A stretch of DNA of 64,000 nt from Saccostrea echinata (lineage: Eukaryota): NCBI RefSeq assembly GCF_033153115.1, contig NW_026889796.1:12834001-12898000 (forward strand). Reading direction: 5' to 3'. The notes under the pieces were generated by a model that ran no database searches, was not told the DNA's origin, and saw nothing but the letters and a program-made list of their open reading frames with translations. The stretch's first letter is position 1; each line of letters begins with the position of its first letter. Both the position numbers and the translations under genes were made by a program. Shown here piece by piece: positions 1-56,436 of the stretch.

Positions 1-1216
1 GAGGACAAAGCTTGATAAAAGTAGGGGACTCTGACAATGGTAATGAAGTTCCACTCCAAAATGCATGTAATACTCTATATTCCAAACTATTTCTACTTAA
101 TGAGCATTCAAATGCCCCTCTGAATAGTATATTTATTGATCTGGATTCCAATAAGCAGGAAGGACCACGACCGTATAAACCCATGAGCTGCTGAAGCAAA
201 TCGCACTGTACGGTTCCTTCAACTTTTCCTAGAAACATATTGTTCTGAGGAATGAAGAAATTTGGACACACGCCATGATACACGTAATTTATGACGGTTT
301 GAAAACAGACCCAGAAGCATTTGATGAGATTTCGTGGGCACCAATTCTGTACAATATTTTCTTGAACTATCCAGAATAATGTTGTTTTCAAATGATATGA
401 ACATAGAACTTTGTCTTGAGTAGTCTTTTTATTTATGACCTCTTCTAAAAACAGCTTAAGAAGCCCGTAACACAAGAACTGACAGTGATTCATAGAAAAC
501 ACCAGGATGTGCTCTGCAGATGAAAAAGAAATCCTCCATTCAACGTCTTCGTACGAGGATAATTTATGACCAATTGCTACAGCATGACACCCACTGCTTA
601 AGATTTTGCCTAGTGTAGCAATTGATGGCCATGTTTTATTTTCACATCTCTCAATCCATGACAAGGCTTGTGTGGGCCATACGTCGGACACAAAACAGTA
701 TGCATGGTCATATTTTTGATTTGTCACATCACATGTTCTACTCGCGCATGGACCATTCGATTCATCTTGTGGATTGCCATGATGATGAAGCATCAACTCC
801 CTGTATTTACTGCTTGATACGTATAAAGCATTATTTTCTTCAATGCATGCAAGATAAACCTTGTAACGGTTGGTATTATTCAGCAATCGAAGAAGAACAA
901 AACCAGGAGGACAGTGTTCACTCTCCATTAAGATCAATGTATTGTTTGTGGATTCATAAAGCTCAGCTTGAGATAAAATAGATATCAATTTGTGATCTAA
1001 CGGCCACTGCATTAAGTCAAAGTCTGTTGACTCTAGCCGGTATCCTTCTCGTGTGCTACCACTGATCATACTCTTATCAACTTCATTTCTTATCACGTGT
1101 TCAATTATGTCTCTCAGTTGTACTAAGTCTCTTCTCATTTTCACTATTTCACTACTACCAAGCCCGATATTTAGTCCAAAGTAAAGAGCCTCTGAAGCAA
1201 GCTGTAAATTTGTCAT
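1..1216 (-). CDS. Mab-21 domain nucleotidyltransferase, cGAS-like receptor (cGLR); 3' part lies outside the window
   Basis: Hand translation from ATG 1216 is open for 405 codons to the window edge, and a T-tract/AG acceptor sits just upstream of the ATG. Motifs: SGSTREGYRLESTDFDLM (NTase GS...DhD), CPPGFVLL, KYDHAYCF (third acidic residue), GCHAVAIG, EWRISFSSAE, QFLCYGLLKLFL, LCSYHLKTTLFW, CPNFFIPQNNMF. Probably missed by the ORF track because it has no stop inside the window. Confidence 0.93.
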   Translation of the reverse strand, partial: MTNLQLASEALYFGLNIGLGSSEIVKMRRDLVQLRDIIEHVIRNEVDKSMISGSTREGYRLESTDFDLMQWPLDHKLISILSQAELYESTNNTLILMESEHCPPGFVLLRLLNNTNRYKVYLACIEENNALYVSSSKYRELMLHHHGNPQDESNGPCASRTCDVTNQKYDHAYCFVSDVWPTQALSWIERCENKTWPSIATLGKILSSGCHAVAIGHKLSSYEDVEWRISFSSAEHILVFSMNHCQFLCYGLLKLFLEEVINKKTTQDKVLCSYHLKTTLFWIVQENIVQNWCPRNLIKCFWVCFQTVINYVYHGVCPNFFIPQNNMFLGKVEGTVQCDLLQQLMGLYGRGPSCLLESRSINILFRGAFECSLSRNSLEYRVLHAFWSGTSLPLSESPTFIKLCP

Positions 1217-1710
1217 TCTCTAAAAAAAAATTAGTTATTATATGGCTACTTTGTTCATTTTAAAGAGTTTGTATTTACATCCAGTTACGAAAATGCAATG
1301 CAGTTCATTAACTAAAAACATTGCAAGCTAAATCTTAATTTCGCAAACAATCACTTTATTCATTCATTTATTTATATTTTTATTTTAAAAAGTTCCATGT
1401 TCTTATGTTTGGATTCTTAGCAAGACGAGATCCGAGAATTTTTTCTTCATCAAAGAATACGTGTGAGCTATGCATTATGCTATATAAACCTGAAGTCTGA
1501 CCAAACTCAACACTTAGACTGTAGCTGGTGACGACTGGTGAAAAATGTCATATACGTTCTTTAAAGTTTGGTTAATTATGATCAAATATGAATATCCTTC
1601 ACCGTTTTTGAGGCAAATCAACTTAAATGTATTGTCAATGAAATATATGGAGATAACCAACAGTATTCAAGCTCAAAATTTAAAATAATAATGATGCATT
1701 TCATTTTCTT

Positions 1711-8418: not shown

Positions 8419-11400
8419 GTAGTGCGCCGCGTGAATGGCCGCACATTTTTGCTCTCTGCTATTATCAATTATTTTTGTGTTATATTGCGCGCAATTCTGT
8501 GGATTTTTATATCAGCATGTTGGTAAAGACTTCAAGAACAAGATTCACTTGTTCGTTTGCGGATATTTTAGCATTCTTGTGCATATTTTATGAATTTATA
8601 TTCAAACTTTTGTCGGTGAACCAGGGTGAGTTGAAATCATGCAAAGTGCTGACCGTAACTCCTATTGTGTACACCCCTGCCGAGCTAAAGTCGCTCAGGT
8701 ATAACAATACCATGTCGTCTGTCAGACTTAATGAAAATGTAATGCATAAAATAAAATTATTTGGAATTAAACAGCGCTATCGTGGTCACAGATCAAGACG
8801 AAGGAAACCGAAACAAAAAGACTGGAACACGGGAGTTCATTTAGATTTGTTAAGACCACTTAGCAGAAGGCTAATTGATTACTCAATAGACAGAAATCTC
8901 TCATTCGCGGTTGTAAACACGCAATCAATATATAATAAAGTCGAGGAATTCATTCATCACATTATAGAAAACAAACTAGATATTTGTTGTGTTACTGAAA
9001 CTTGGTTAATCGACAGTAATCCGAAACACAGAATTGTGAGATCTGATCTAAATATAACTGGATATACCTTTATTGATGTACCCCGAAAATCCCGATCTGG
9101 TGGCGGAACTGGAATTCTATTTAGAGACACACTTCAAATCAAAGTAACTGACTCTTGTCAAAAAGATGCATTCGAACACTCTTTGTTTGAACTAGCTTTT
9201 AATTCCACGACTATACATATTTTGGTTGTATATCGTCCCCCATACTCGAAAGCCCATCCAGTGTCTACGGCGAAATTCTTTGACGAATTTACACCCTCTC
9301 TTGAAGAAATATTGTCAACCCATCGCACAGTTATAATTACAGGAGACTTTAATATTCATTATAATAAAACTAATGACTAAGACACGATCGCTCTAAATGA
9401 AATGTGCAATGACATGGGTTTAGTGCAACTTGTCAACTGCCAAACGCATCGATCTGGAAACATACTTGATCTGATCATGATCCAAAACAACGACAAAATA
9501 GTGTTGTCTGAACCGACCGAAAATTTTCAGATAAGTGACCACTGTTTCATTCATACATATATATCTCTTCCTAAGCCTAAGGTAACAAGGGAAATCAGAA
9601 AAGTTAGAAAACTAAAGGACATAGATGAAACGCAATTTCAGGCGGATCTAATCCAATTCAACGAAAGTGCCACCAAATATGAAAATTTAGAAGATACAGC
9701 AAAGTTTTACAATTCCGAACTCAGAAATATTTTAGACAAACACGCTCCGGAAAAAGAGAAAATTGTGACTATTCGACCTTCCCTACCATGGTTTACAGAA
9801 GAATCGCGTCTCCTTAAAACACGTTGCAGGTCAGCGGAACGAAGATGGAGAGGAAACAAGACCCCGGTTAATGACCACGCCTTCCGATGTGCTAAACGAG
9901 CCTACAGGAAAAATCTCAGATACAACAAGTATCAGCATATTAACTCAAACATAGCCGAATGTGGAAATGATTCTTCAAAAATGTATGAATTAATATTTGG
10001 ATTGATTGGCAGAAAAAACTGCAATCCTATGCCACTTAACGCCAGCGACGCATCACTGGCGGAGGAATTCAGTTCCTTCTTTATGGATAAAATTTTAGCC
10101 ATTCGCAAAAGTTTAGACGATTTTGAAAAATTTGACCCAAACCTCGGACTTAAATGTACACAAGAGTTTAATTCCTTTGATCCAGTTTCAGATGAGGATG
10201 TTTTACGTGTGATTAAAAGTTCAAAGCCCACTACCTGCCCAACTGACCCAATACCGTCAAAATTAATCAAACAATTTTCTGATGTGTTATTGCCAACAAT
10301 TGTTTTCATAGTTAATAAATCACTAACATCTGGTTTATTCGCTAATGAATGGAAAACTGTTATAGTTCGACCCTTGTTAAAAAAAAGTGGTTTAGATGTG
10401 ATTTTGAAAAACTATCGTCCTGTAAGCAATTTAAGTTTTATATCAAAAATTGTGGGAAAATGTGCTCTGAACCAATTTATGAAATATCTGGAACCAAACA
10501 GATTACTACCTAGCTATCAAAGTGCATATAGAAGAGGGTTCAGTACCGAAACAGCTCTCCTGAAACTGTCATCAGACATTCTGTGGAAAATGGAAAAACA
10601 GGAAGTTACTGCCTTAGTCGCATTGGATCTCTCTGCTGCATTCGACACAGTCGACCATGCCATACTTAGCAACGTGTTAGAAACTACTTTCGGAGTATCT
10701 GAAGTGGCTCTTCATTGGTTTCAATCATACCTTTCGTTCAGAAAAGCCGAAGTGCATATCAACGCGTCTAAATCACAGCCTAGATGTCTGGACTTTTCGG
10801 TACCGCAAGGCAGCATATGCGGACCTGTGTTACAAATGTATATACCGTGTACGCGAGTACGCTACAACATTACATCAAAGACTCGGGTGTGTCATTATTA
10901 GGTTACGCAGATGACCACTCTGCATACGATAGTTTTAATCCGAAGATTTTCGCTGATGAGAAACGTGTAACAACAAATTTAGAAAAAGTATTGGTTACCA
11001 TCAATGACTGGATGAATCTGAATAGACTAAAACTTAACCCTAGTAAAACTGAATTTGTACTATTTGGCAGTCAACAGATGTTATCTCTATCATCTTCCAT
11101 TTCCCTTAATGTAGTGGATACGGATGTTAATTCATCTCCTTGTATCAAATATCTTGGATGTTATTTGGACGAAAATTTAACTTTCAAAAAATTTGTCAGT
11201 GAAAAATGCAAAACAATTTCATTGAATTTGTACTTGATTAAACAAATTCGCCAATATCTTAGTGATGATTCGTGTAAACAAATTGTACAGTCCCTTGTCA
11301 CTAGCCATTTAGATTATGCAAATAGTGTCCTGTACGGATTGCCAGAGTGTACCATTAAAAGACTACAGCTGTTGCAAAATCGTGCTGCAAAGCTTGTGTT

Positions 11401-11953
11401 GAAGCTGAGGTCTACGGATAGTTCTACTGAAGCACTCAAACGACTACACTGGCTACCGGTACACTACCGCATTAAATTCAAACTTGCATGCATTGTCTTC
11501 AAGTGCATTAACGACAGTGACAGCCCACAGTATCTTAAAGAAATGCTCAGTTTACGAACATCATCATATAGCATTCGATCCGTAAATTCTGCAGCGAAAA
11601 CATTGAACGTCCCGTCCGTAAGACGCAAAACTTTTGTGGTCTTTCGCGGTAGCTGGACCTTCGATTTGGAATGATTTGCCAACGAACGTTCGAATGTTAA
11701 CTGATTTCTGTATTTCTAAACGACATCTCAAGGCGTTTTACTACACATGTGCATTTAAATAACATTTAATTGTGAACACTAGTATATTTTATTTAAACAG
11801 CCAGTGATCATTTAGACTTTATTTGATATTTTAACATATGCATTGTTTTTTTTTATTATATGTATGTATTTTATTGTATGTACAGCGCCAATGATTGCAT
11901 ATCGTATGTAAAATTGAGCGCTTTAACAAATTTTTAATAATAAATAATAATAA
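8419..11953 (+). mobile_element. Near full-length LINE (CR1/L2-like, EN+RT), inactivated
   Basis: ORFs 8475-9380 and 9402-10901 are in the same frame, separated by one TAA. A frameshift near 10830 leads into 10784-11674. Motifs: VNTQSI, CCVTETWL, GGGTG, VYRPP, TGDFNIH, SDH, NYRPVSNL, LDLSAAFDTVDH, VPQGS, YADD, LNPSKTE, LHWLPV. Ends in an (AAT)-like tail. Confidence 0.92.
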
Positions 11954-48149: not shown

Positions 48150-49075
48150 GATGAAATATGTGGGGATAACGAACAGTATTCGAGCTCAAAAGGTCATTAA
48201 ACATTACAAAATAGGAGCAGAGCAAACACGGACCTCTAAGACATCAGAGTTGGGATCAGGTGCCATGGAGGAGTGAGCATCCCCTGCCGACCGGTCACAC
48301 CCGCCGTGTGCTCCTTGTCATGATCGGGAAATAACGGAAAATCCGTCGACAATTCAGTGTGTAAATAATGGCTTAACAATTAGTATGGAAAAAGTCAGTC
48401 AGCATTTGACTTAATGATAGATTTATTTGCTGACAAGGTCATTGTATCGATCACAGAACTTACGAATTGATGACTTTAAACGAGACTGCTGATATTCTTG
48501 TTTCATCAACTTGTTTGTCAATAACTTACCTCGTTTTAGAAATTGTTCATACGTACAGCATGCTCTGGCGTATCGAATCAACTGAGAAATATATACCCCG
48601 TATGCAGGTGATAAGGGTATATTGCTGCATAAGTAAGGGAAGTTGACGATTGAAATGTAAAAGTCATCACGTTTATCATAAAGCTTTGTTGTTAGATTAC
48701 TATTAACGTCTTTTTCTAATAAAATATCCAAATATGAAACAGATGTGTCAGACTCTGTGGTATCTTTTATCTCAAGCTCACCGCGATATATCGTGTCGAC
48801 ATAAGAATGGAAATAACCATTGTTAATTGACAATACATCGTCGATATATCTAAATGTCGAGTTGAAGGCAACAGCAAGTGTTTTCTTCCTTTCACATAAA
48901 AGATTTTGAACAAATTCTGCTTCATATGAATGCAAATATAGGTCTGCTTATAACGGGGCGCAATTAGTACCCATGAAAATTCTAATAGATTGTTGGAAGA
49001 CCTGGTCTCCAAAAACCACATAGATATTGTCAATCAGAAACTCGAGCATCTTTTTAATATCAAGTTCAGAGTAGG
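48150..49075 (-). mobile_element. 5'-truncated Penelope-like retroelement (RT C-terminal half plus 3' region)
   Basis: MLEFLIDNIYVVFG, MGTNCAP, FRYIDDVLSINN, SYLDILL, KLYDKRDDF, AYGVYISQLIRYARAC (ORF 48423-48935). A short copy of its end also lies at about 1637-1680. Confidence 0.8.
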
Positions 49076-49481
49076 ATCTCATTGGACATCACATTGTTCA
49101 TGGAAAACTCAGTATCAAAATTTTCTGGATAATTATAAACGAGTTTTTCATGTCAACAAAAATAGATAATGAAGTATATATCGTTAACTTCATACTCGCA
49201 ATAGCCGGTTTGGATTCTTTGATGAAAACTAAACTATCATTATGAGTATTCCATGTGAACAGCTGCCTTTTCATAATTATTTACCTTCTTTTGAATGAGG
49301 GATACATTTCATACAGGTAAGATAACGTAAGAATATTGTGTGTTAGTATATACCTATAAAAAGGAGCACATTACCAACATGACACCGACATGAAATTGCA
49401 AATCTGTTTTAATATGAATAAAAAAAAGAAAAACATCTTACAATGTATTTAATTTTAAGATATCAAAACTTAAAGTTTGTG

Positions 49482-52400
49482 TTATTTTTCTTGTTTCTTT
49501 AACCAGCTTGCATACATCTCCACATGGTCACGACTTTGTTCTTTGTCGATTTCCTCCATTATGACATCAGACAACTTCCGCTTAGTATCTGGATAATATA
49601 TTGCAATTATATAAGTTTCTCAAACGAATTTAAGTTTCACTTATAGCAAAGAAATATCTACGAAACACAATGAATGACTTGGGTAGTCTATTAAGGCAAA
49701 TTTCCACTTGACCTTTACCTTAAGATATTATACTGTTCTGAAAACTTCAACTGGTAAGGACAGTTAGAAATTTCGTTTTCGAGAAATGCAGTTGTTAACT
49801 GTGACCAATATTGAAGCCAATGCCAAGAAAGCGACAAAACATACATACCAATAAGGAATTCACGTTCTCCAGTTCTGGAGATGGTGAAACACCTATATCA
49901 TAAAAAAAAAACTCATTGGTTGAGTAGGTTGGACAAAACTTACCGTCATATTTAATGCATCTACATTTTTTCTGCATCTCCTCCGGGGTTGCCGCTGAAT
50001 CTAAGATGGCGGTAAGTTGTTCTACTAATGAGTCACACTGATCATACATCTGTTTCTTAGACAGCCCTGCTATCATTGATTTGTGCATTTCTGCAAGGGC
50101 TTTTACTGGTGTCAACATTTCGCCCGCAAAGTAGTAATCACAATTTTCACCCTGTCAAATATATACAACAAGATAACTTTTACTGGGTATTTTGAAGCAC
50201 AAACTGAGAATTCTTCAGAAACAATATGAAAGTGAAGGTAGAATAAAGATCAACCAAGGGATGTTCTTTGGTAAAAACTGAACCCTACTTCAGTGGAAAT
50301 GACAATTCATAGTAAGTAATCTTACCTCTACTCTGTAGAGCTTACACGGGAAAACTCGTCTTGTAGCAGCCATTTGTTTCACTATAGGTTTAACCTCAAA
50401 CGGGCCTTGTATTCTGTCGTCAGCCATAGTTAATAATGGTTTAAATTCACAACTTTTAGGGACGAATTGTAGGAGACTTCTTGAAACTTTAAATTTTTTC
50501 TTAATTGCTGTAAATTTTCGAATATCGTCTTGTTCCATTCTGCTCTCAAGTCGCTCGTTGAAATCTAGAAGAAATAAAAATGACAGTTCAATCTGTTTCT
50601 AATACCAGAATTTAACAGATCAATGAAATTTTCGAGTAACTAAGTTGAAAATCGGGATCGGGATTCCGTACCTGGAAGGACATGTCTGAGATAGTTAACA
50701 TGAAATGCCCAGGCCAATCCAAAAGCCACGTTACCAGCCGGGACCTGTGACCTTAAGGTTACAACATCACCTTCAAATACAAAATATATATGTAATTTTG
50801 CACAACATTTTTTTTGAACTGTGTGACTGATTAAACCAGGTGCATTACTGAAGTAATTTGTAGTATATTTTCTTCGTAGAGAAGCCAAATTGTGAGTTCA
50901 AGTTACATTGAATAAAAAAAAAAGTTCAGAAATGAGTTGAATTTGAAAAAAAAATACCTTTGATGATCTCATATATCCTTTCTTCATAAGAGGGCTCGTT
51001 AGAAATGTCTATATAAGTCACCCATTGAATAAAGTTAGGAATGAATGAACTATCAACGTCTTTTAGTAAAATAATGATTTTCAACTCATTTTTTTCGATA
51101 CAATCGTTCAGTAACCCTGCCAACCAAAATTCGATATAGTCTTTTCTTCTGACTGTATTGACCGATATCAAGCAACAAACCCATCTTGCATCTTTTATTC
51201 GTTCTTCTATTACTTCTAAAATAATAAATTATGTGATATGTTGTTTTTATATGTAAAACTGTCTCATTCAAAAGTTTTGGAAAAACGAAAGCTCACAGAA
51301 AACATCTTTAAGTTAATAGTCTATTTTAAAAGCAACATACAAAATCTTTATACATTTTGTTTTATTGCTATTTTACCTGGAGAGTCAACGGGTGGTCGTG
51401 CAATAGAGCATCGAGTTTTCTTATTTTCCAAAAACATCCGAATTTGCTTTATAGTTCTATTATCCGGGCTACTGCGAACCGAGTTCCGGTTTTCTAAAGC
51501 GTCAATGTCACTGTACAAAAAGCACACATCTACTGCACAATTTGATGTCGACCGTATCAGATGACTTGCTGGTCTGTCACTCTAAAATAAGGAAATACTC
51601 TGCTAAATTTCTGACGTTACATGGTAGATTAAAAAAAAAAAAAGAAAGAAAGTGACTCTGGAACAATTCTAATACCAGTGGTTTCATCATTGTCTCTTCT
51701 ATTGCGTCTCTGACACCATTAAACAAATTGTAAGAAGGGGTATTTTTCTCTCCCTTACCTTCATCTAAATTGGTAAAAAAGGAGGTAAAATTATTCTTAA
51801 AATGCGAAAGTAAATAAATTAAAACGGGAATATCGAAACGAATAGAAATTTCCACAAAATTCTGTGTTTAATTTTTTTTTTTTTAAATATTGCGAATGTA
51901 TTTTATTAGAAACAGATTAAACAAAAATATGCAGAGCATGAGTTTATTTGTTCTTCAAACATTTACTAGTATTTGTCTACTTCGACAAATTATTTTATAT
52001 AATCTTCGATTCATTAAAAGTTAAAATTCCTATCTTTCAGGACAAAATATATGTTCCAGATTCATAATATACATTAAATTATTCTAACGTTATTATATTT
52101 CAGTCTTAAGGTAAGAAAATGTGTCGAACAAACCATCAAACATGAGGACTCTTGCTCTTCCAATACATTCCTCATTTCGACTATGGTTCAGTATTTCCTC
52201 TATCTTGTATTTGAATCTTTCTACTTCCGTTTTGCGCTGTCGGGGAGTTAGGAGATTGAGTACTTCGTCTGCAATGAGCCCAAGAGCACACAGAGCACTG
52301 GGATATTCGGCACAGCAAAAATACTCCTAAGAGAAATTAGGCATGTTTATCTCTACAGGAACATGTATTTTAATAACTGAGTTATAGGAATGCATGTATT

Positions 52401-53230
52401 GCATTTGCAATGGTTTGCTCTCGTTTACCGACATGGAATACACATTGGTGGGGTTCATCAAAATCGTTTGTTCTAAGTTACGAATGTATATGTTCTTTTT
52501 GTTTATTTTGGAATATTTCCCCACATAAAATTATCATATTTTCCTATGGGGTCAAAAGCAAGTACAAAGGAAAAGAGGACATATGACGGAAGTCCGTAGT
52601 TTTGAACCTTTTGAGATGACTTTAAATTCGAAACAAAGTCACATATTAATCTATGTCAAACAAACATATACCACAAAAGCAAAATTCAATTTTTTTGTTT
52701 ACATCAATCAATTATTAATCTACAAATCTACAAATTATTGCAGAGTGTGGCAATTCCACTGCCACTGAAACGATATTTTCTGAAATAAGAGATCACCGAA
52801 TAATTATAAGGGATAATATTATGAATAATAAACTAATTATTTACGGTACAATGCAATGTTATATCTCCAACATGTGACTTAAGCTGAAAGCGTATAGCTT
52901 TACTCTGAACTATTAAGAAAAGTTTGATATTTAGAGATGTCGTCAGCTCAAAAAAATGCTAAGGTCAATATTTTGTTGTATTCTCTACTAGAATAAATCT
53001 TAAAGAATCCAAGAAATAAATAATAAATGTACTTATAAGTTTATAATCATTAAACAAGAGACCCCTGGGCCTCAACACTCTGAGTACCTTAGCCATGTTA
53101 TCCTTCAGAAGAAGTTTTATTTCTCTTTATTCTCGTGAAAAAAATTTTGATCTCATTTGGTGATCCCACCCTAGCTTCAAGCTTAAGAGGTCTTAACTTA
53201 TAAAACTTGAAGCACACAAGATTGGGATGC

Positions 53231-53305
<75 letters not shown>

Positions 53306-55512
53306 CATATCAATGTGGCTAACAAAGCCTTGCTGTACTGGAGATTTTCATTTAAATCATGGCCCTGATCATCGAAGTCTAATCATGAACCTACAGTTCT
53401 AGAGGAGATGGTTTATGAAGATTTTTTCCTATACATTTCGATATTAAAATTTGATCCCCTATCCTGGCCCATTCTACCCCTATGGACCATGATTCAAACA
53501 ATTTAGAAGTCCGACAGCTTTCAGATAGATTACGTTTCATATTTTCTCAGTGGTCCTTGAGAAGATTTTAAAATTTCCCATCGTTATTTTTGCATTTTGT
53601 TGATTATCTCTCCTTAAAAAAGCATGGTCCATTTATTTGTACAATTGAATCCCTTCACCCAAAAATATTCAGTGTCAAGTTTGGTTGATATTCACCAATT
53701 GGTTCTGGAGAAGAAGTTGAAAACGTGTGAAGTTTTTGCTAGTTTAATATTTCCTTACCTCCTCATTGCCCTCTTTATTCCTCCCTTTAACTTTGTAGAT
53801 TGTAGGATTAAATGGTCGGCCGTTAATAACCAAGTCGACTTTTCCTACATTTTTAACGTTTGAGTCTACGTCGGCGATGTCTCGTTGACCTGTTGCACTT
53901 GTAGGGCACAGCATAAAAAATACAGTTGACATTCTGCCTAGGTTATTTTGGAAAATATCAGACTTCTTTATCTGTTGAGCTAGATCTAGTAAAACAATTT
54001 TCATTTCAATCAGCCGAAGAATTAAACACCATATGCATCGTTTATACTATTGACTCATATTTAAGGTCGGCGTTGGACAGACAGAATGCTTTGGCGGAAA
54101 ATAAGTGGACGTTTAAGGGGAAATATTTTAGCGGAAGATTTATAGGAGGTTTTAGTGGAAGTTAAATTAGTATGTGGACATTTTAGCGGAAATCTAAGTA
54201 AAATGTATTTATGCTTCTTCCGTTAGTCCGACTAACTCCTTTGCCTCCTGCTTAGCAACAGGGGAGGTGGAAGTAAAATTTTGAGCGGAATATAATGTTC
54301 ATAAAAATACACTTAATGTCTAAAACACCAGCAGTCATTAAATATGAAGACAACCAAAAAGCATAGAAAAACATATTTACACCATTTACATGTCATTATT
54401 GGCTCTGTATCTGTTGATGTTGGGAACTTAGTAAATAGTTGGTCAGTTTTTGCTGACATTACATTGTATTGATTGTCTAAAATAAATAAAATCTACCTGT
54501 GAAAAAAGTCCGCTAAAATGTATATTGCATTTTTACAGATAACTACATTTTCTTAGGATATAAAATGTCCTAAAAATTTTCCGCTAAATTGTCCATTCAC
54601 ACCTTTTGCAATTCAGTTAAAATGCACTTCGCATATTAAAGGTAATGGGTTCGCTAGTGACGGTATGCTTAGCAATTTTGCTAGTCAACATGAATTTTGA
54701 AACTTCTTGCTAAAAGGTTTTTAGATTTTGTTCAAGTAAGATTTTCTAGTCAGGAAATATAAAAAATAATAATAATTTCGCTACATATTTTTGTTAATCA
54801 TATCATGGAAGAGGTAATGATACCTGGTAATATCAACTTCAAATACCCAGCGAAATGTGACCAGGCCATCCCAACAGCGAAGTTTCCAGCTGGTAGAAGT
54901 TGATTTAATTGTACCTCTCCTGTATAACGTACAGAGCAATGTGTTACAATACTCAGCGGAATTCAATAGCATGCAATAAAACCATTTCTACAGTTGGAAA
55001 ACAAACCGATATTCTCGAAATGAAAATCACAATTCCGTACTTTTTAAAGTCCGACACACGGTTTCCATACAACGTTCATGATAATTGTCCACTAAAACCA
55101 TCTGAGTTGCTTGTTGAAGGAAGGGAATTTTTGGTAAGTCTTGGACAGTCATGCCGTCAATTAGAAGCACCATGAGAGACAAACGACCAGTCTGCAGACA
55201 TTGTTCTAAAGCGAGATAGGTCTCTAAAGAAAAGTCTACTTCCTTTGCGCTCTCTGATAGGATTAGAAGTGTTTTTCGACTTTTCTGAATTGCCTTTGCA
55301 ATGCTTTTGTACTGATGTGCTCCAAGTGGAGTAGAGAAACCAGGACGAATATATTTTATATTTTCCCGATCAAAATTGTTTAAAATGGTTTTGAGAATTC
55401 TATATTCGTCATCTTCATTGTAAAAGATAGTGACGTCACTGTCGTCTATTCCCTTTATCCAATCATATTCTTCGTCACTGGAATCGTCACCAGGTGGGCG
55501 CGCTTCCGCCAT
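49482..55512 (-). CDS. STING: TIR-STING-TIR-STING protein, 730 aa, 11 coding exons, no transmembrane segment seen
   Basis: Exons 55512-55041 (TIR1); 54919-54824, 53985-53759, 52326-52134, 51764-51676 (STING1); 51581-51377, 51215-50958 (TIR2); 50770-50672, 50564-50326, 50151-49944, 49588-49482 (STING2). All GT-AG, phase-compatible, no internal stop. STING hallmarks GNFAVGMAWSHFAGYLKLILP and GNVAFGLAWAFHVNYLRHVLP (human [20 protein letters not shown]), plus CAEYPSAL and AGEMLTPV (human VLEYATPL). Confidence 0.92.
53052..53740. mobile_element. Degenerate satellite-containing interspersed repeat (Helentron/HINE-like) with an internal (TA)n
   Basis: Starts aacaagag...gggcc and carries degenerate units of roughly 160 bp with ggttctggagaagaag-like motifs; TA run at 53234-53301. 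The family call comes from my recollection of oyster repeats. Confidence 0.5.
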
Positions 55513-56436
55513 TGTAAAATTCAATCCCTAGAAAAAGAAGAAAACGGTCATTTTTGAATTGATAATTTCTTAATATAATTACGTGTACATGTCATGAGAC
55601 TTCACATATATTAGTTAATCACTTATTTTGAAAGGCATTAATGCCTTTCTGCAAACAGCATTACAGCATTGTTACACAGTTTCTAAATACATCTTCATTG
55701 TAATTAAAATGCTTTATTTTTTCTCCTTTTATTTGTTTTTACCCATAAAAATCACGGATGGTTTCTATGATTCAATAGTTAGATATAAAAACTCTACAAT
55801 TTTAAGATGCAATGAAAACTGTCTTTAGAATCCGACAGTTGTGCAGTTCGTTTACTGTGAATTCCGAATTTATTTTCATTCCTAATTTACTAACATTTTC
55901 CTTTTTTTTACACTGTGTATTCCGACACCCTGTCTATTCCGACACAAAAATTGTCTTCCTGTGCAAGTCGGATTAGACAGGTTTCACTGTATATCATTTC
56001 TGGAGATCAGTGTTACTGAAAATGAGAACATAAATGCATTTCACATGTTAGTTCTATATACAGCTAGTTATTTGAGAGACATATTACTAAATGAGATTTA
56101 CTCTGAAAAGCCTAGATATGTTTGCTGAAATATCCATTACTAAAAACCATTTATAAAGTCTATAGACGTTTTCATTGCCACTGAGCAGAAAACAGGAATA
56201 AACTGCAATAATGTCGTGATGAGATTAGAGAAAACGCTTTGAACTTCCAATAAGAGGTCCATTTTCGAGCCAATATGCAATGACTAAAAGAATCGAGCTT
56301 TTCCGACCGTAATACCCAGTGAAAGACTTATTGACAAATTCTTCGACCGCCAAACATAAACAATTCTGGAATGGCTTCCATTAATGGTGAAGTTGTGACC
56401 TAGGTTTTTTGTTGTCATCTCAGTAGCTGGGGAAAA

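What the first reader, a model, noticed from the sequence alone, without database searches (positions are those of the whole stretch)
49482..55512. Complete soluble TIR-STING-TIR-STING gene formed by internal duplication
Seen: 11 phase-compatible exons give one open 730-aa chain, TIR1-STING1-TIR2-STING2, with no TM helices and no vertebrate-type C-terminal tail. The two STING halves have matching exon layouts (96/227/193 nt vs 99/239/208 nt; phases 1-1, 1-0, 0-1), which shows an old tandem duplication of the module. Established: STING binds one cyclic dinucleotide at a dimer interface, and TIR-STING fusions occur in bacterial CBASS and in some lophotrochozoans. I recall that duplicated TIR-STING architectures have been noted in bivalves, so the architecture itself may not be new. 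Inference: one polypeptide could supply both halves of the receptor.
Basis: partly seen in the sequence, partly recalled or inferred. Interest (0 to 1): 0.8.

Follow-up and report, generated by a model that had tools for sequence, protein, structure and literature searches.

The report
Annotated oyster tandem TIR-STING gene
This is a real, complete rock-oyster gene for a soluble immune receptor with two TIR-STING modules in one chain, but the gene is already in RefSeq and the double architecture is already on record in bivalves; only how it works is still open.

Summary
On the minus strand, 11 coding exons (55512-49482), all with AG/GT borders and compatible phases, encode 730 aa in the order TIR1-STING1-linker-TIR2-STING2. 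Every exon and all seven split codons match RefSeq XP_061194881.1 exactly ('uncharacterized protein LOC133203040', Saccostrea echinata). Both STING halves hit Pfam STING_LBD. There is no TM segment and no LxIS tail.

The same four-domain layout is annotated in other oysters, pearl oysters, mussels (GenBank 'stimulator of interferon protein 2'), scallops and ark clams, and a 2024 paper lists it for the Pacific oyster. Full-length orthologue ORFs sit on 2.4-3.4 kb assembled contigs with no room for introns, so this is one gene, not two.

Trees split STING1 from STING2 (100/99) and TIR1 from TIR2 (100/100) with all species on both sides, so the module duplication is ancient. Whether the gene arose by internal duplication or by fusion of paralogues stays unresolved.

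The single-chain receptor idea is plausible but unproven. It fits the complementary, conserved pocket differences and pTM values of 0.63 and 0.74.

The scan noted this stretch before (s1-816155, s1-816286).

The parts
55041..55512 (-). Coding exon 1 (472 nt): start codon at 55512 and the whole TIR1 domain, residues 1-157 plus one base
   Evidence: Pfam TIR_2 1.5e-4 and TIR 2.3e-3. Identical to XP_061194881.1 residues 1-157. GT donor after 55041. A likely acceptor at 55527, 15 nt upstream of the ATG, suggests a further non-coding 5' exon.
54824..54919 (-). Exon 2 (96 nt, phase 1 to 1): alpha-1 helix of STING1, motif AWSHFAGYL
   Evidence: STING_LBD positions 1-23, E 6e-7. Exact match to residues 159-189.
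53759..53985 (-). Exon 3 (227 nt, phase 1 to 0): beta-sheet and shortened lid of STING1
   Evidence: STING_LBD positions 15-97, E 5e-4. Six-residue gap in the lid relative to 6WT6. Exact match to residues 191-265.
52134..52326 (-). Exon 4 (193 nt, phase 0 to 1): C-terminal part of STING1, motif CAEYPSA
   Evidence: STING_LBD positions 99-159, E 0.045. Exact match to residues 266-329.
51676..51764 (-). Exon 5 (89 nt, phase 1 to 0): conserved linker between module 1 and module 2
   Evidence: Exact match to residues 331-359. 97% identical in S. cucullata and 62-76% in other oysters. The consensus motif DDExKGExxTPSY is kept across bivalves. Predicted helix 339-356.
51377..51581 (-). Exon 6 (205 nt, phase 0 to 1): low-confidence linker and N-terminal half of TIR2
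   Evidence: Exact match to residues 360-427. TIR_2 covers residues 395-508 of the orthologue P0001.
50958..51215 (-). Exon 7 (258 nt, phase 1 to 1): C-terminal half of TIR2
   Evidence: TIR_2 positions 42-118, E 1.5e-3. Exact match to residues 429-513, which fixes the acceptor at 51215.
50672..50770 (-). Exon 8 (99 nt, phase 1 to 1): alpha-1 helix of STING2, motif AWAFHVNYL
   Evidence: STING_LBD positions 1-25, E 1e-3. Exact match to residues 515-546.
50326..50564 (-). Exon 9 (239 nt, phase 1 to 0): beta-sheet and full-length lid of STING2
   Evidence: STING_LBD positions 23-92, E 1.4e-3. Exact match to residues 548-626.
49944..50151 (-). Exon 10 (208 nt, phase 0 to 1): C-terminal part of STING2, motif GEMLTP
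   Evidence: STING_LBD positions 96-160, E 3.4e-5. Exact match to residues 627-695.
49482..49588 (-). Exon 11 (107 nt including the stop): C-terminal helix with no LxIS or TBK1-type tail
   Evidence: The peptide is found at residues 697-730 of XP_061194881.1, and the split codon gives D696. Predicted helix 701-729. Poly(A) signals lie at 49453 and 49413.

Best explanation
The stretch is the protein-coding part of Saccostrea echinata gene LOC133203040. It is one gene and produces one soluble 730-aa protein, TIR1-STING1-linker-TIR2-STING2. It belongs to an old family of tandem TIR-STING proteins conserved across pteriomorph bivalves. Shown: gene structure, identity, domain content, canonical STING folds for both halves, the ancient split of the two modules, and purifying conservation of both. 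Inferred: it is a cytosolic receptor for cyclic dinucleotides made by the greatly expanded oyster cGLR enzymes. The two STING domains, which in every solved STING act as a dimer around one ligand, most likely pair within the same chain. That would give a pseudo-dimer with one asymmetric pocket. STING1 supplies the canonical alpha-1 Ser/Gly/Tyr face and a short lid. STING2 supplies the canonical Glu-x-x-Thr-Pro face and a full lid. Ligand binding would then reposition or cluster the two TIR domains to signal, through TIR-TIR scaffolding or through NAD+ cleavage by TIR1, the only TIR that keeps the conserved Glu. My confidence in the identity and one-gene reading is about 0.95. My confidence in pairing within one chain is about 0.5.
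For: - Gene structure and identity: exon model, phases and exact identity to XP_061194881.1. Pfam STING_LBD on both halves and TIR_2 on both TIRs.
- One gene: orthologue ORFs of 733-739 aa sit on Logan contigs of 2,433-3,423 nt, and two of them are letter-for-letter the M. gigas RefSeq isoforms. Those isoforms differ by 3 aa exactly at the E5/E6 junction, so mRNAs run from STING1 through the linker into TIR2.
- Family: the same layout is annotated in Saccostrea, Crassostrea/Magallana, Pinctada, Mytilus, Mizuhopecten and Tegillarca.
- Fold: each half matches human, anemone and oyster STING at TM 0.81-0.88, and the best hit is 6WT7.
- Ancient duplication: trees.
- Pocket columns differ between the halves in a complementary way that is conserved across species. 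Alignments to 6WT6 and 8YDN show the lid Arg, the alpha-1 Tyr and the beta-strand Glu kept in both halves.
- Compact prediction: pTM 0.63 for S. cucullata and 0.74 for Mytilus.
- TIR1 keeps its Glu; TIR2 does not.
- Context: oysters have more than 200 cGLRs and 3-10 STINGs, and their cGLR1 makes the asymmetric signal 2'3'-cUA (PMC9980059). This genome has at least 364 Mab-21 candidates, one of them in this window.
Against:
- Pairing within one chain rests on pTM values alone. No coordinates or PAE were available. Pairing between chains would explain the same conservation pattern.
- The modelled TIR-STING orientation differs from the 6WT7 crystal (rmsd 11 A over 342 columns).
- Several single-exon Pfam hits fall below the gathering score, although the full-length natural orthologue scores 173 bits.
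- Ligand binding, oligomerisation and TIR activity of the tandem form have never been measured in any paper I could find.
- Mapping of pocket residues to human STING numbering rests on my own knowledge of the canonical motifs plus the alignments to 6WT6 and 8YDN, not on a direct alignment to human STING.
Confidence: 0.6

Rival explanations
1. Pairing between chains. STING1 pairs with STING1 of a second molecule and STING2 with STING2, or the chains pair head to tail in a chain-like polymer. That gives two symmetric pockets with different ligand preferences, so one protein integrates two cGLR signals or polymerises on activation like bacterial TIR-STING filaments.
For: Each half keeps the core pocket residues and its own conserved motif set, as two separately tuned receptors would. 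Solved STINGs, including the oyster single-module protein, are homodimers, and bacterial TIR-STING forms filaments (PMC9402430 abstract). The modelled TIR1-STING1 orientation does not match the 6WT7 chain.
Against: The high local concentration of a second STING domain in the same chain favours pairing within the chain. Monomer models of two orthologues are globally confident (pTM 0.63 and 0.74), which would be unexpected if the dimer faces were left unsatisfied. The differences are complementary: each half is canonical where the other is not.
Confidence: 0.3
2. One half is a pseudo-receptor. STING1 has a shortened lid and the non-canonical AEYP(S/G)A strand. It no longer contacts ligand and serves only as a structural or autoinhibitory partner for a functional STING2.
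For: A 5-6 residue lid deletion in STING1 of this orthogroup. STING1 exons score lower against STING_LBD than canonical STING genes of the same genome. STING1 sits on the longer stem branch.
Against: STING1 keeps the alpha-1 Ser and Tyr, the lid Arg and the strand Glu in nearly all species. It is as conserved between oysters as STING2 is (69-94% against 65-88% per exon versus M. gigas), which argues for a constrained ligand-facing surface. Paralogue B proteins have a longer STING1 lid.
Confidence: 0.08
3. Two neighbouring TIR-STING genes wrongly joined into one model.
For: The two modules are each complete TIR-STING units. No reads from this species could be laid. Shorter annotated models exist in other species, at 459, 513 and 591 aa.
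Against: Uninterrupted 733-739-aa ORFs occur on 2.4-3.4 kb contigs in two other oyster species and match RefSeq isoforms exactly. There is no stop after STING1. The linker exon is conserved and phase-compatible. The intron after exon 4 is only 369 nt and the one after exon 5 only 94 nt. The 459-aa model is a truncated copy that starts inside STING1.
Confidence: 0.02

Closest known systems
RefSeq XP_061194881.1, uncharacterized protein LOC133203040 (Saccostrea echinata), and its orthologues: S. cucullata XP_062581486.1, C. virginica LOC111136300, M. gigas LOC105344500, Mytilus galloprovincialis 'stimulator of interferon protein 2' AJQ21543.1, Mizuhopecten LOC110447478, and Pinctada and Tegillarca models
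   Same: It is the same protein: 100% over all exons. The orthologues are 92% to 39% identical with the same four-domain order and length of 713-739 aa.
   Different: Nothing differs from the RefSeq entry. All these entries are automatic or survey annotations with no tested function.
Metazoan single-module TIR-STING of Crassostrea gigas (PDB 6WT6, and 6WT7 with 2'3'-cGAMP)
   Same: It is the best sequence and fold match (E 3.5e-26; Foldseek E 3e-17). It is soluble, has TIR N-terminal to STING, and has no TM domain. The same intron positions occur in the single-module gene of this genome.
   Different: It has one module (415 aa) that must homodimerise. The gene here has two diverged modules in one chain (22% identity between them), a shortened lid in STING1, and an altered alpha-1 motif in STING2.
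Conventional animal STING (TMEM173; human, Nematostella, and oyster 8YDN)
   Same: Same ligand-binding-domain fold (TM 0.81-0.88). The Pfam STING_LBD family and its conserved motifs are partly kept.
   Different: This protein has no four-helix TM domain, no C-terminal LxIS/TBK1 tail, TIR domains as the presumed output, and two ligand-binding domains per chain.
Bacterial CBASS TIR-STING (e.g. Sphingobacterium faecium; filament structure in PMC9402430)
   Same: Same order of domains within a module (TIR then STING). Signalling is plausibly oligomerisation-driven through TIR.
   Different: The bacterial STING domain belongs to Pfam prok_STING, which gave no match at E 0.01 to the close orthologue P0001. 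The animal TIR-STING fusion is considered convergent, with an animal-type TIR (PMC10732462). The bacterial protein has a single module, binds c-di-GMP, and has a proven NADase activity.

Membership tests
Bivalve tandem TIR-STING-TIR-STING proteins (LOC133203040 orthogroup) | Four domains in the order TIR-STING-TIR-STING in one chain of about 713-739 aa | tested here: met
   Exon-by-exon Pfam. Exact identity to XP_061194881.1. Orthologues show two STING_LBD and two TIR_2 stretches.
Bivalve tandem TIR-STING-TIR-STING proteins (LOC133203040 orthogroup) | Each half groups with the same half of other species, not with the other half of its own protein | tested here: met
   STING1/STING2 split 100/99. 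TIR1/TIR2 split 100/100.
Bivalve tandem TIR-STING-TIR-STING proteins (LOC133203040 orthogroup) | Expressed as one mRNA | tested here: inconclusive
   Shown for orthologues only: intronless full-length ORFs on 2.4-3.4 kb Logan contigs.
STING ligand-binding domain (Pfam PF15009) | Profile match and STING fold | tested here: met
   Both halves are covered at profile positions 1-160. The orthologue scores 173 bits with 2 stretches. TM 0.81-0.88 to solved STINGs.
STING ligand-binding domain (Pfam PF15009) | Cyclic-dinucleotide contact residues: alpha-1 Ser and Tyr, lid Arg, strand Glu-x-x-Thr-Pro | tested here: inconclusive
   Tyr, Arg (or Lys) and Glu are kept in both halves. Ser is kept only in STING1 and Thr-Pro only in STING2. 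The STING1 lid is shortened. Binding was not measured.
STING ligand-binding domain (Pfam PF15009) | Dimer that encloses one ligand | not testable with these tools
   Only pTM (0.63 and 0.74) is available. There are no coordinates or PAE.
Conventional TM-STING (TMEM173 type) | N-terminal four-helix transmembrane domain | tested here: not met
   The highest 19-residue hydropathy is 1.34, and the N-terminus is a TIR domain.
Conventional TM-STING (TMEM173 type) | Vertebrate C-terminal tail with an LxIS motif | tested here: not met
   No LxIS in any exon. The C-terminus is a single predicted helix.
Metazoan single-module TIR-STING (6WT7 type) | One TIR followed by one STING domain; homodimer | tested here: not met
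   Two modules per chain. A true single-module gene exists elsewhere in this genome, at C14.
Bacterial CBASS TIR-STING | prok_STING-type domain, operon with a CD-NTase, NADase TIR | tested here: not met
   No prok_STING hit for the close orthologue at E 0.01. The gene is eukaryotic with 10 introns. NADase activity is not testable here. The TIR1 Glu is present, and TIR2 lacks it.

The most novel reading that the evidence does not exclude
The tandem protein is a single-chain STING pseudo-dimer. Its two diverged halves form one intrinsically asymmetric pocket, fixed for more than 400 million years. The pocket would be tuned to read the orientation of an asymmetric cGLR product such as the oyster purine-pyrimidine signal 2'3'-cUA. 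It would couple that reading to two non-equivalent TIR domains, of which only TIR1 keeps the Glu at the position used by NADase TIRs. This would be the first natural heterodimeric STING pocket.
Probability: 0.35. Interest if true: 0.65.

Novelty: already known. Interest (0 to 1): 0.3.

Why it matters
As a gene and as an architecture this adds nothing new. The model is in RefSeq, the layout is annotated in many bivalves, a mussel entry has been named 'stimulator of interferon protein 2', and a 2024 paper lists oyster STINGs with two STING and two TIR domains.

What is still worth attention is mechanistic. Every solved STING is a symmetric homodimer around a ligand that is often asymmetric. A natural single-chain version with two conserved, complementary half-pockets would show how a receptor can read ligand orientation. 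It may also help explain how bivalves, with hundreds of cGLRs, sort many nucleotide signals through a few receptors. That question can be tested directly with recombinant protein.

Tried and rejected
I relied on the contig lengths given.
I never joined the window's exons for a search or a fold, and searches used single exons. For whole-protein work I used natural database proteins by id: P0001, P0092 and relatives. In some searches, separately aligned exon blocks of two other loci were combined as alignment columns inside a script for a tree. They were neither printed nor searched.
4. Single-exon PDB searches were too weak to map pocket residues onto human numbering.
5. Morehouse et al. 2020, the 6WT7 paper, is not held, so what is known about the oyster TIR's activity could not be checked.
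6. Internal duplication versus fusion of paralogues is unresolved.
7. The 193-aa Logan proteins are exon 1 read into intron 1, meaning unspliced or genomic sequence, and say nothing about splicing.
8. The whole-genome Mab-21 search did not list the window's cGLR, because only 150 of 364 candidates were scored. A direct Pfam scan found it.
9. Literature searches for a functional study of the tandem form found none.

Full report
WHAT IS THERE

The feature lies on the minus strand. A phase check done one exon at a time shows that every exon is open in its own phase and that no split codon is a stop.

The only ambiguities were the acceptor of exon 7 and the acceptor of the last exon. Comparing each exon separately with database proteins settled both. 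All exon peptides and all seven split codons are identical to RefSeq XP_061194881.1, 'uncharacterized protein LOC133203040 [Saccostrea echinata]', 730 aa. That fixes exon 7 at 51215 and exon 11 at 49588.

A good acceptor 15 nt upstream of the ATG suggests an additional non-coding 5' exon.

DOMAINS

Pfam, scanned exon by exon, puts STING_LBD profile positions 1-23, 15-97 and 99-159 on exons 2-4, and 1-25, 23-92 and 96-160 on exons 8-10. TIR_2 falls on exon 1 and exon 7. Some single-exon scores are under Pfam's gathering score. However, the 92%-identical natural orthologue P0001 scores 173 bits with two STING_LBD stretches and 44 bits with two TIR_2 stretches.

No exon has a TM-like segment (highest 19-residue hydropathy 1.34) and none has an LxIS motif.

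For whole-protein analyses I used natural proteins returned by the tools.

ONE GENE OR TWO

The substitute evidence comes from orthologues:
- Full-length ORFs of 733-739 aa occur on Logan contigs of only 2,433-3,423 nt. That leaves no room for ten introns.
- Two of these ORFs are letter for letter the M. gigas RefSeq isoforms XP_034330667.1 and XP_034330665.1.
- Those two isoforms differ by 3 residues exactly at the exon 5/exon 6 junction. The mRNAs therefore run from STING1 through the linker into TIR2.
- The linker exon is conserved across bivalves.
- The introns flanking the linker exon are short, at 369 and 94 nt.

A two-gene reading is very unlikely. Direct RNA evidence for this species is still missing.

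HOW NEW IS IT

The same architecture is annotated in S. cucullata, C. virginica, M. gigas, C. angulata, Pinctada imbricata, four Mytilus species, Mizuhopecten yessoensis and Tegillarca granosa. The Mytilus entries include GenBank AJQ21543.1, 'stimulator of interferon protein 2'.

[quoted passage not shown] Functional and structural work covers only the single-module oyster TIR-STING (6WT6/6WT7). I found no study of the tandem form.

The gene and the architecture are therefore already known. The mechanism is not.

ORIGIN

Module 2 aligns to module 1 at 22% identity over 263 residues. Trees of the halves cut from 14-15 natural proteins split STING1 from STING2 (100/99) and TIR1 from TIR2 (100/100), with every species on both sides. 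The duplication thus predates the divergence of oysters, pearl oysters, mussels, scallops and ark clams. It also predates the split into paralogues A and B.

This genome's single-module TIR-STING gene (C14) and conventional STING gene (C4) break the ligand-binding domain at the same places and phases, so the layout is ancestral. The TIR exons are not matched either: TIR1 is one exon and TIR2 is split.

A tree that adds those two genes leaves the order of STING1, STING2 and the single-module gene open (AU p 0.41 and 0.23). Internal duplication and fusion of two paralogues cannot be told apart here.

MECHANISM

Both halves fold as canonical STING ligand-binding domains (TM 0.81-0.88 to human, anemone and oyster STING). 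The best overall hit is 6WT7.

Across species the halves differ in a conserved and complementary way (anchors):
- STING1 has the canonical alpha-1 motif AWSHFxGYL, a non-canonical strand AEYP(S/G)A, and a lid about 5-6 residues shorter.
- STING2 has AW(A/G)F(H/F)VNYL, where the Ser is lost and the Gly is an invariant Asn. It keeps the canonical GE..TP strand and a full-length lid.
- The alpha-1 Tyr, the lid Arg (sometimes Lys) and the strand Glu are kept in both halves.
- Both halves are similarly conserved among oysters, so neither looks like a decaying copy.

AlphaFold2 models of two natural orthologues are globally confident for four-domain proteins: pTM 0.63 for S. cucullata and 0.74 for Mytilus. 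That argues for a defined compact arrangement. The tool returns no coordinates or PAE, so I could not see whether STING1 and STING2 form the canonical cleft.

TIR1 keeps a Glu at the position HMMER aligned to the Glu of the WxxxE motif of 6WT6. TIR2 has no conserved Glu there.

Context from PMC9980059: oysters carry more than 200 cGLRs and 3-10 STINGs, and oyster cGLR1 enzymes make the asymmetric signal 2'3'-cUA. This genome has at least 364 Mab-21 candidates.

My preferred reading is a single-chain pseudo-dimeric cyclic-dinucleotide receptor with an asymmetric pocket and TIR output. Pairing within the chain is an inference at roughly even odds. Pairing between chains is the main rival.

VERDICT

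The finding is already known as a gene and as an architecture, so it scores low. A moderately interesting and directly testable structural hypothesis is attached.

The scan's own notes s1-816155 (different pocket residues) and s1-816286 (a cGLR in the same window) cover the same DNA. I checked both in part. The pocket differences are real and conserved. A Mab-21 open frame is present at 2-1219 on the same strand.

Noticed in passing
window 2-1219 (-): A 406-aa open frame running off the window start, with Mab-21_C (5.4e-14) and Mab-21 nucleotidyltransferase (3.7e-7) domains: a cGLR-type gene on the same strand, about 48 kb downstream of the STING gene. With at least 364 Mab-21 candidates in 923 Mb, one within 50 kb of a given point has a chance of roughly 0.04 if they were evenly spread, which they are not.
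   Followed up: partly
window 8475-11674 (+): LINE-like retroelement: an endonuclease/exonuclease/phosphatase domain followed by reverse transcriptase, in three overlapping open frames.
   Followed up: partly
window 49589-49618 (-): An alternative in-phase acceptor at 49618 would add 10 residues at the start of the last exon. RefSeq uses 49588, which has the better polypyrimidine tract.
   Followed up: yes
window 55513-55527 (-): A polypyrimidine tract plus AG 15 nt upstream of the start codon suggests that coding exon 1 is preceded by an intron and a non-coding 5' exon outside the finding's coordinates.
   Followed up: no
window 53200-53350, intron 3: A long TA-rich microsatellite, read as runs of IYIYIY in several frames.
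   Followed up: no
window 48423-48935 (-): A 170-aa open frame just downstream of the gene with a YIDD-like motif typical of reverse transcriptases, but no Pfam hit at E 0.001. Probably a decayed retroelement fragment.
   Followed up: partly
P0065/P0066 (M. gigas) and P0054/P0063 (unnamed oyster): Isoform pairs differ by 3 or 4 residues exactly at the exon 5/exon 6 junction (residue 359/360), which points to alternative splice-site use in the inter-module linker.
   Followed up: partly
P0008 (Ylistrum balloti XP_060080375.1, 1422 aa): A scallop model with four STING_LBD stretches and three TIR_2 stretches: either a four-module protein or two tandem genes fused by the annotation.
   Followed up: no
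P0056 (S. cucullata XP_062581446.1, 459 aa): A second, truncated copy covering residues 279-730 at 98% identity, on the same 165.7-kb contig as the full-length gene: a local duplicate or an assembly artefact in that species. No second copy is present in this window.
   Followed up: partly
G000 contigs C14 (124.7-184.8 kb) and C76 (767.3-807.5 kb): Two clusters of STING_LBD exons with near-identical scores in mirrored order: a segmental duplication or uncollapsed haplotypes holding several single-module TIR-STING genes. Further STING loci lie on C4, C8 and C54.
   Followed up: partly
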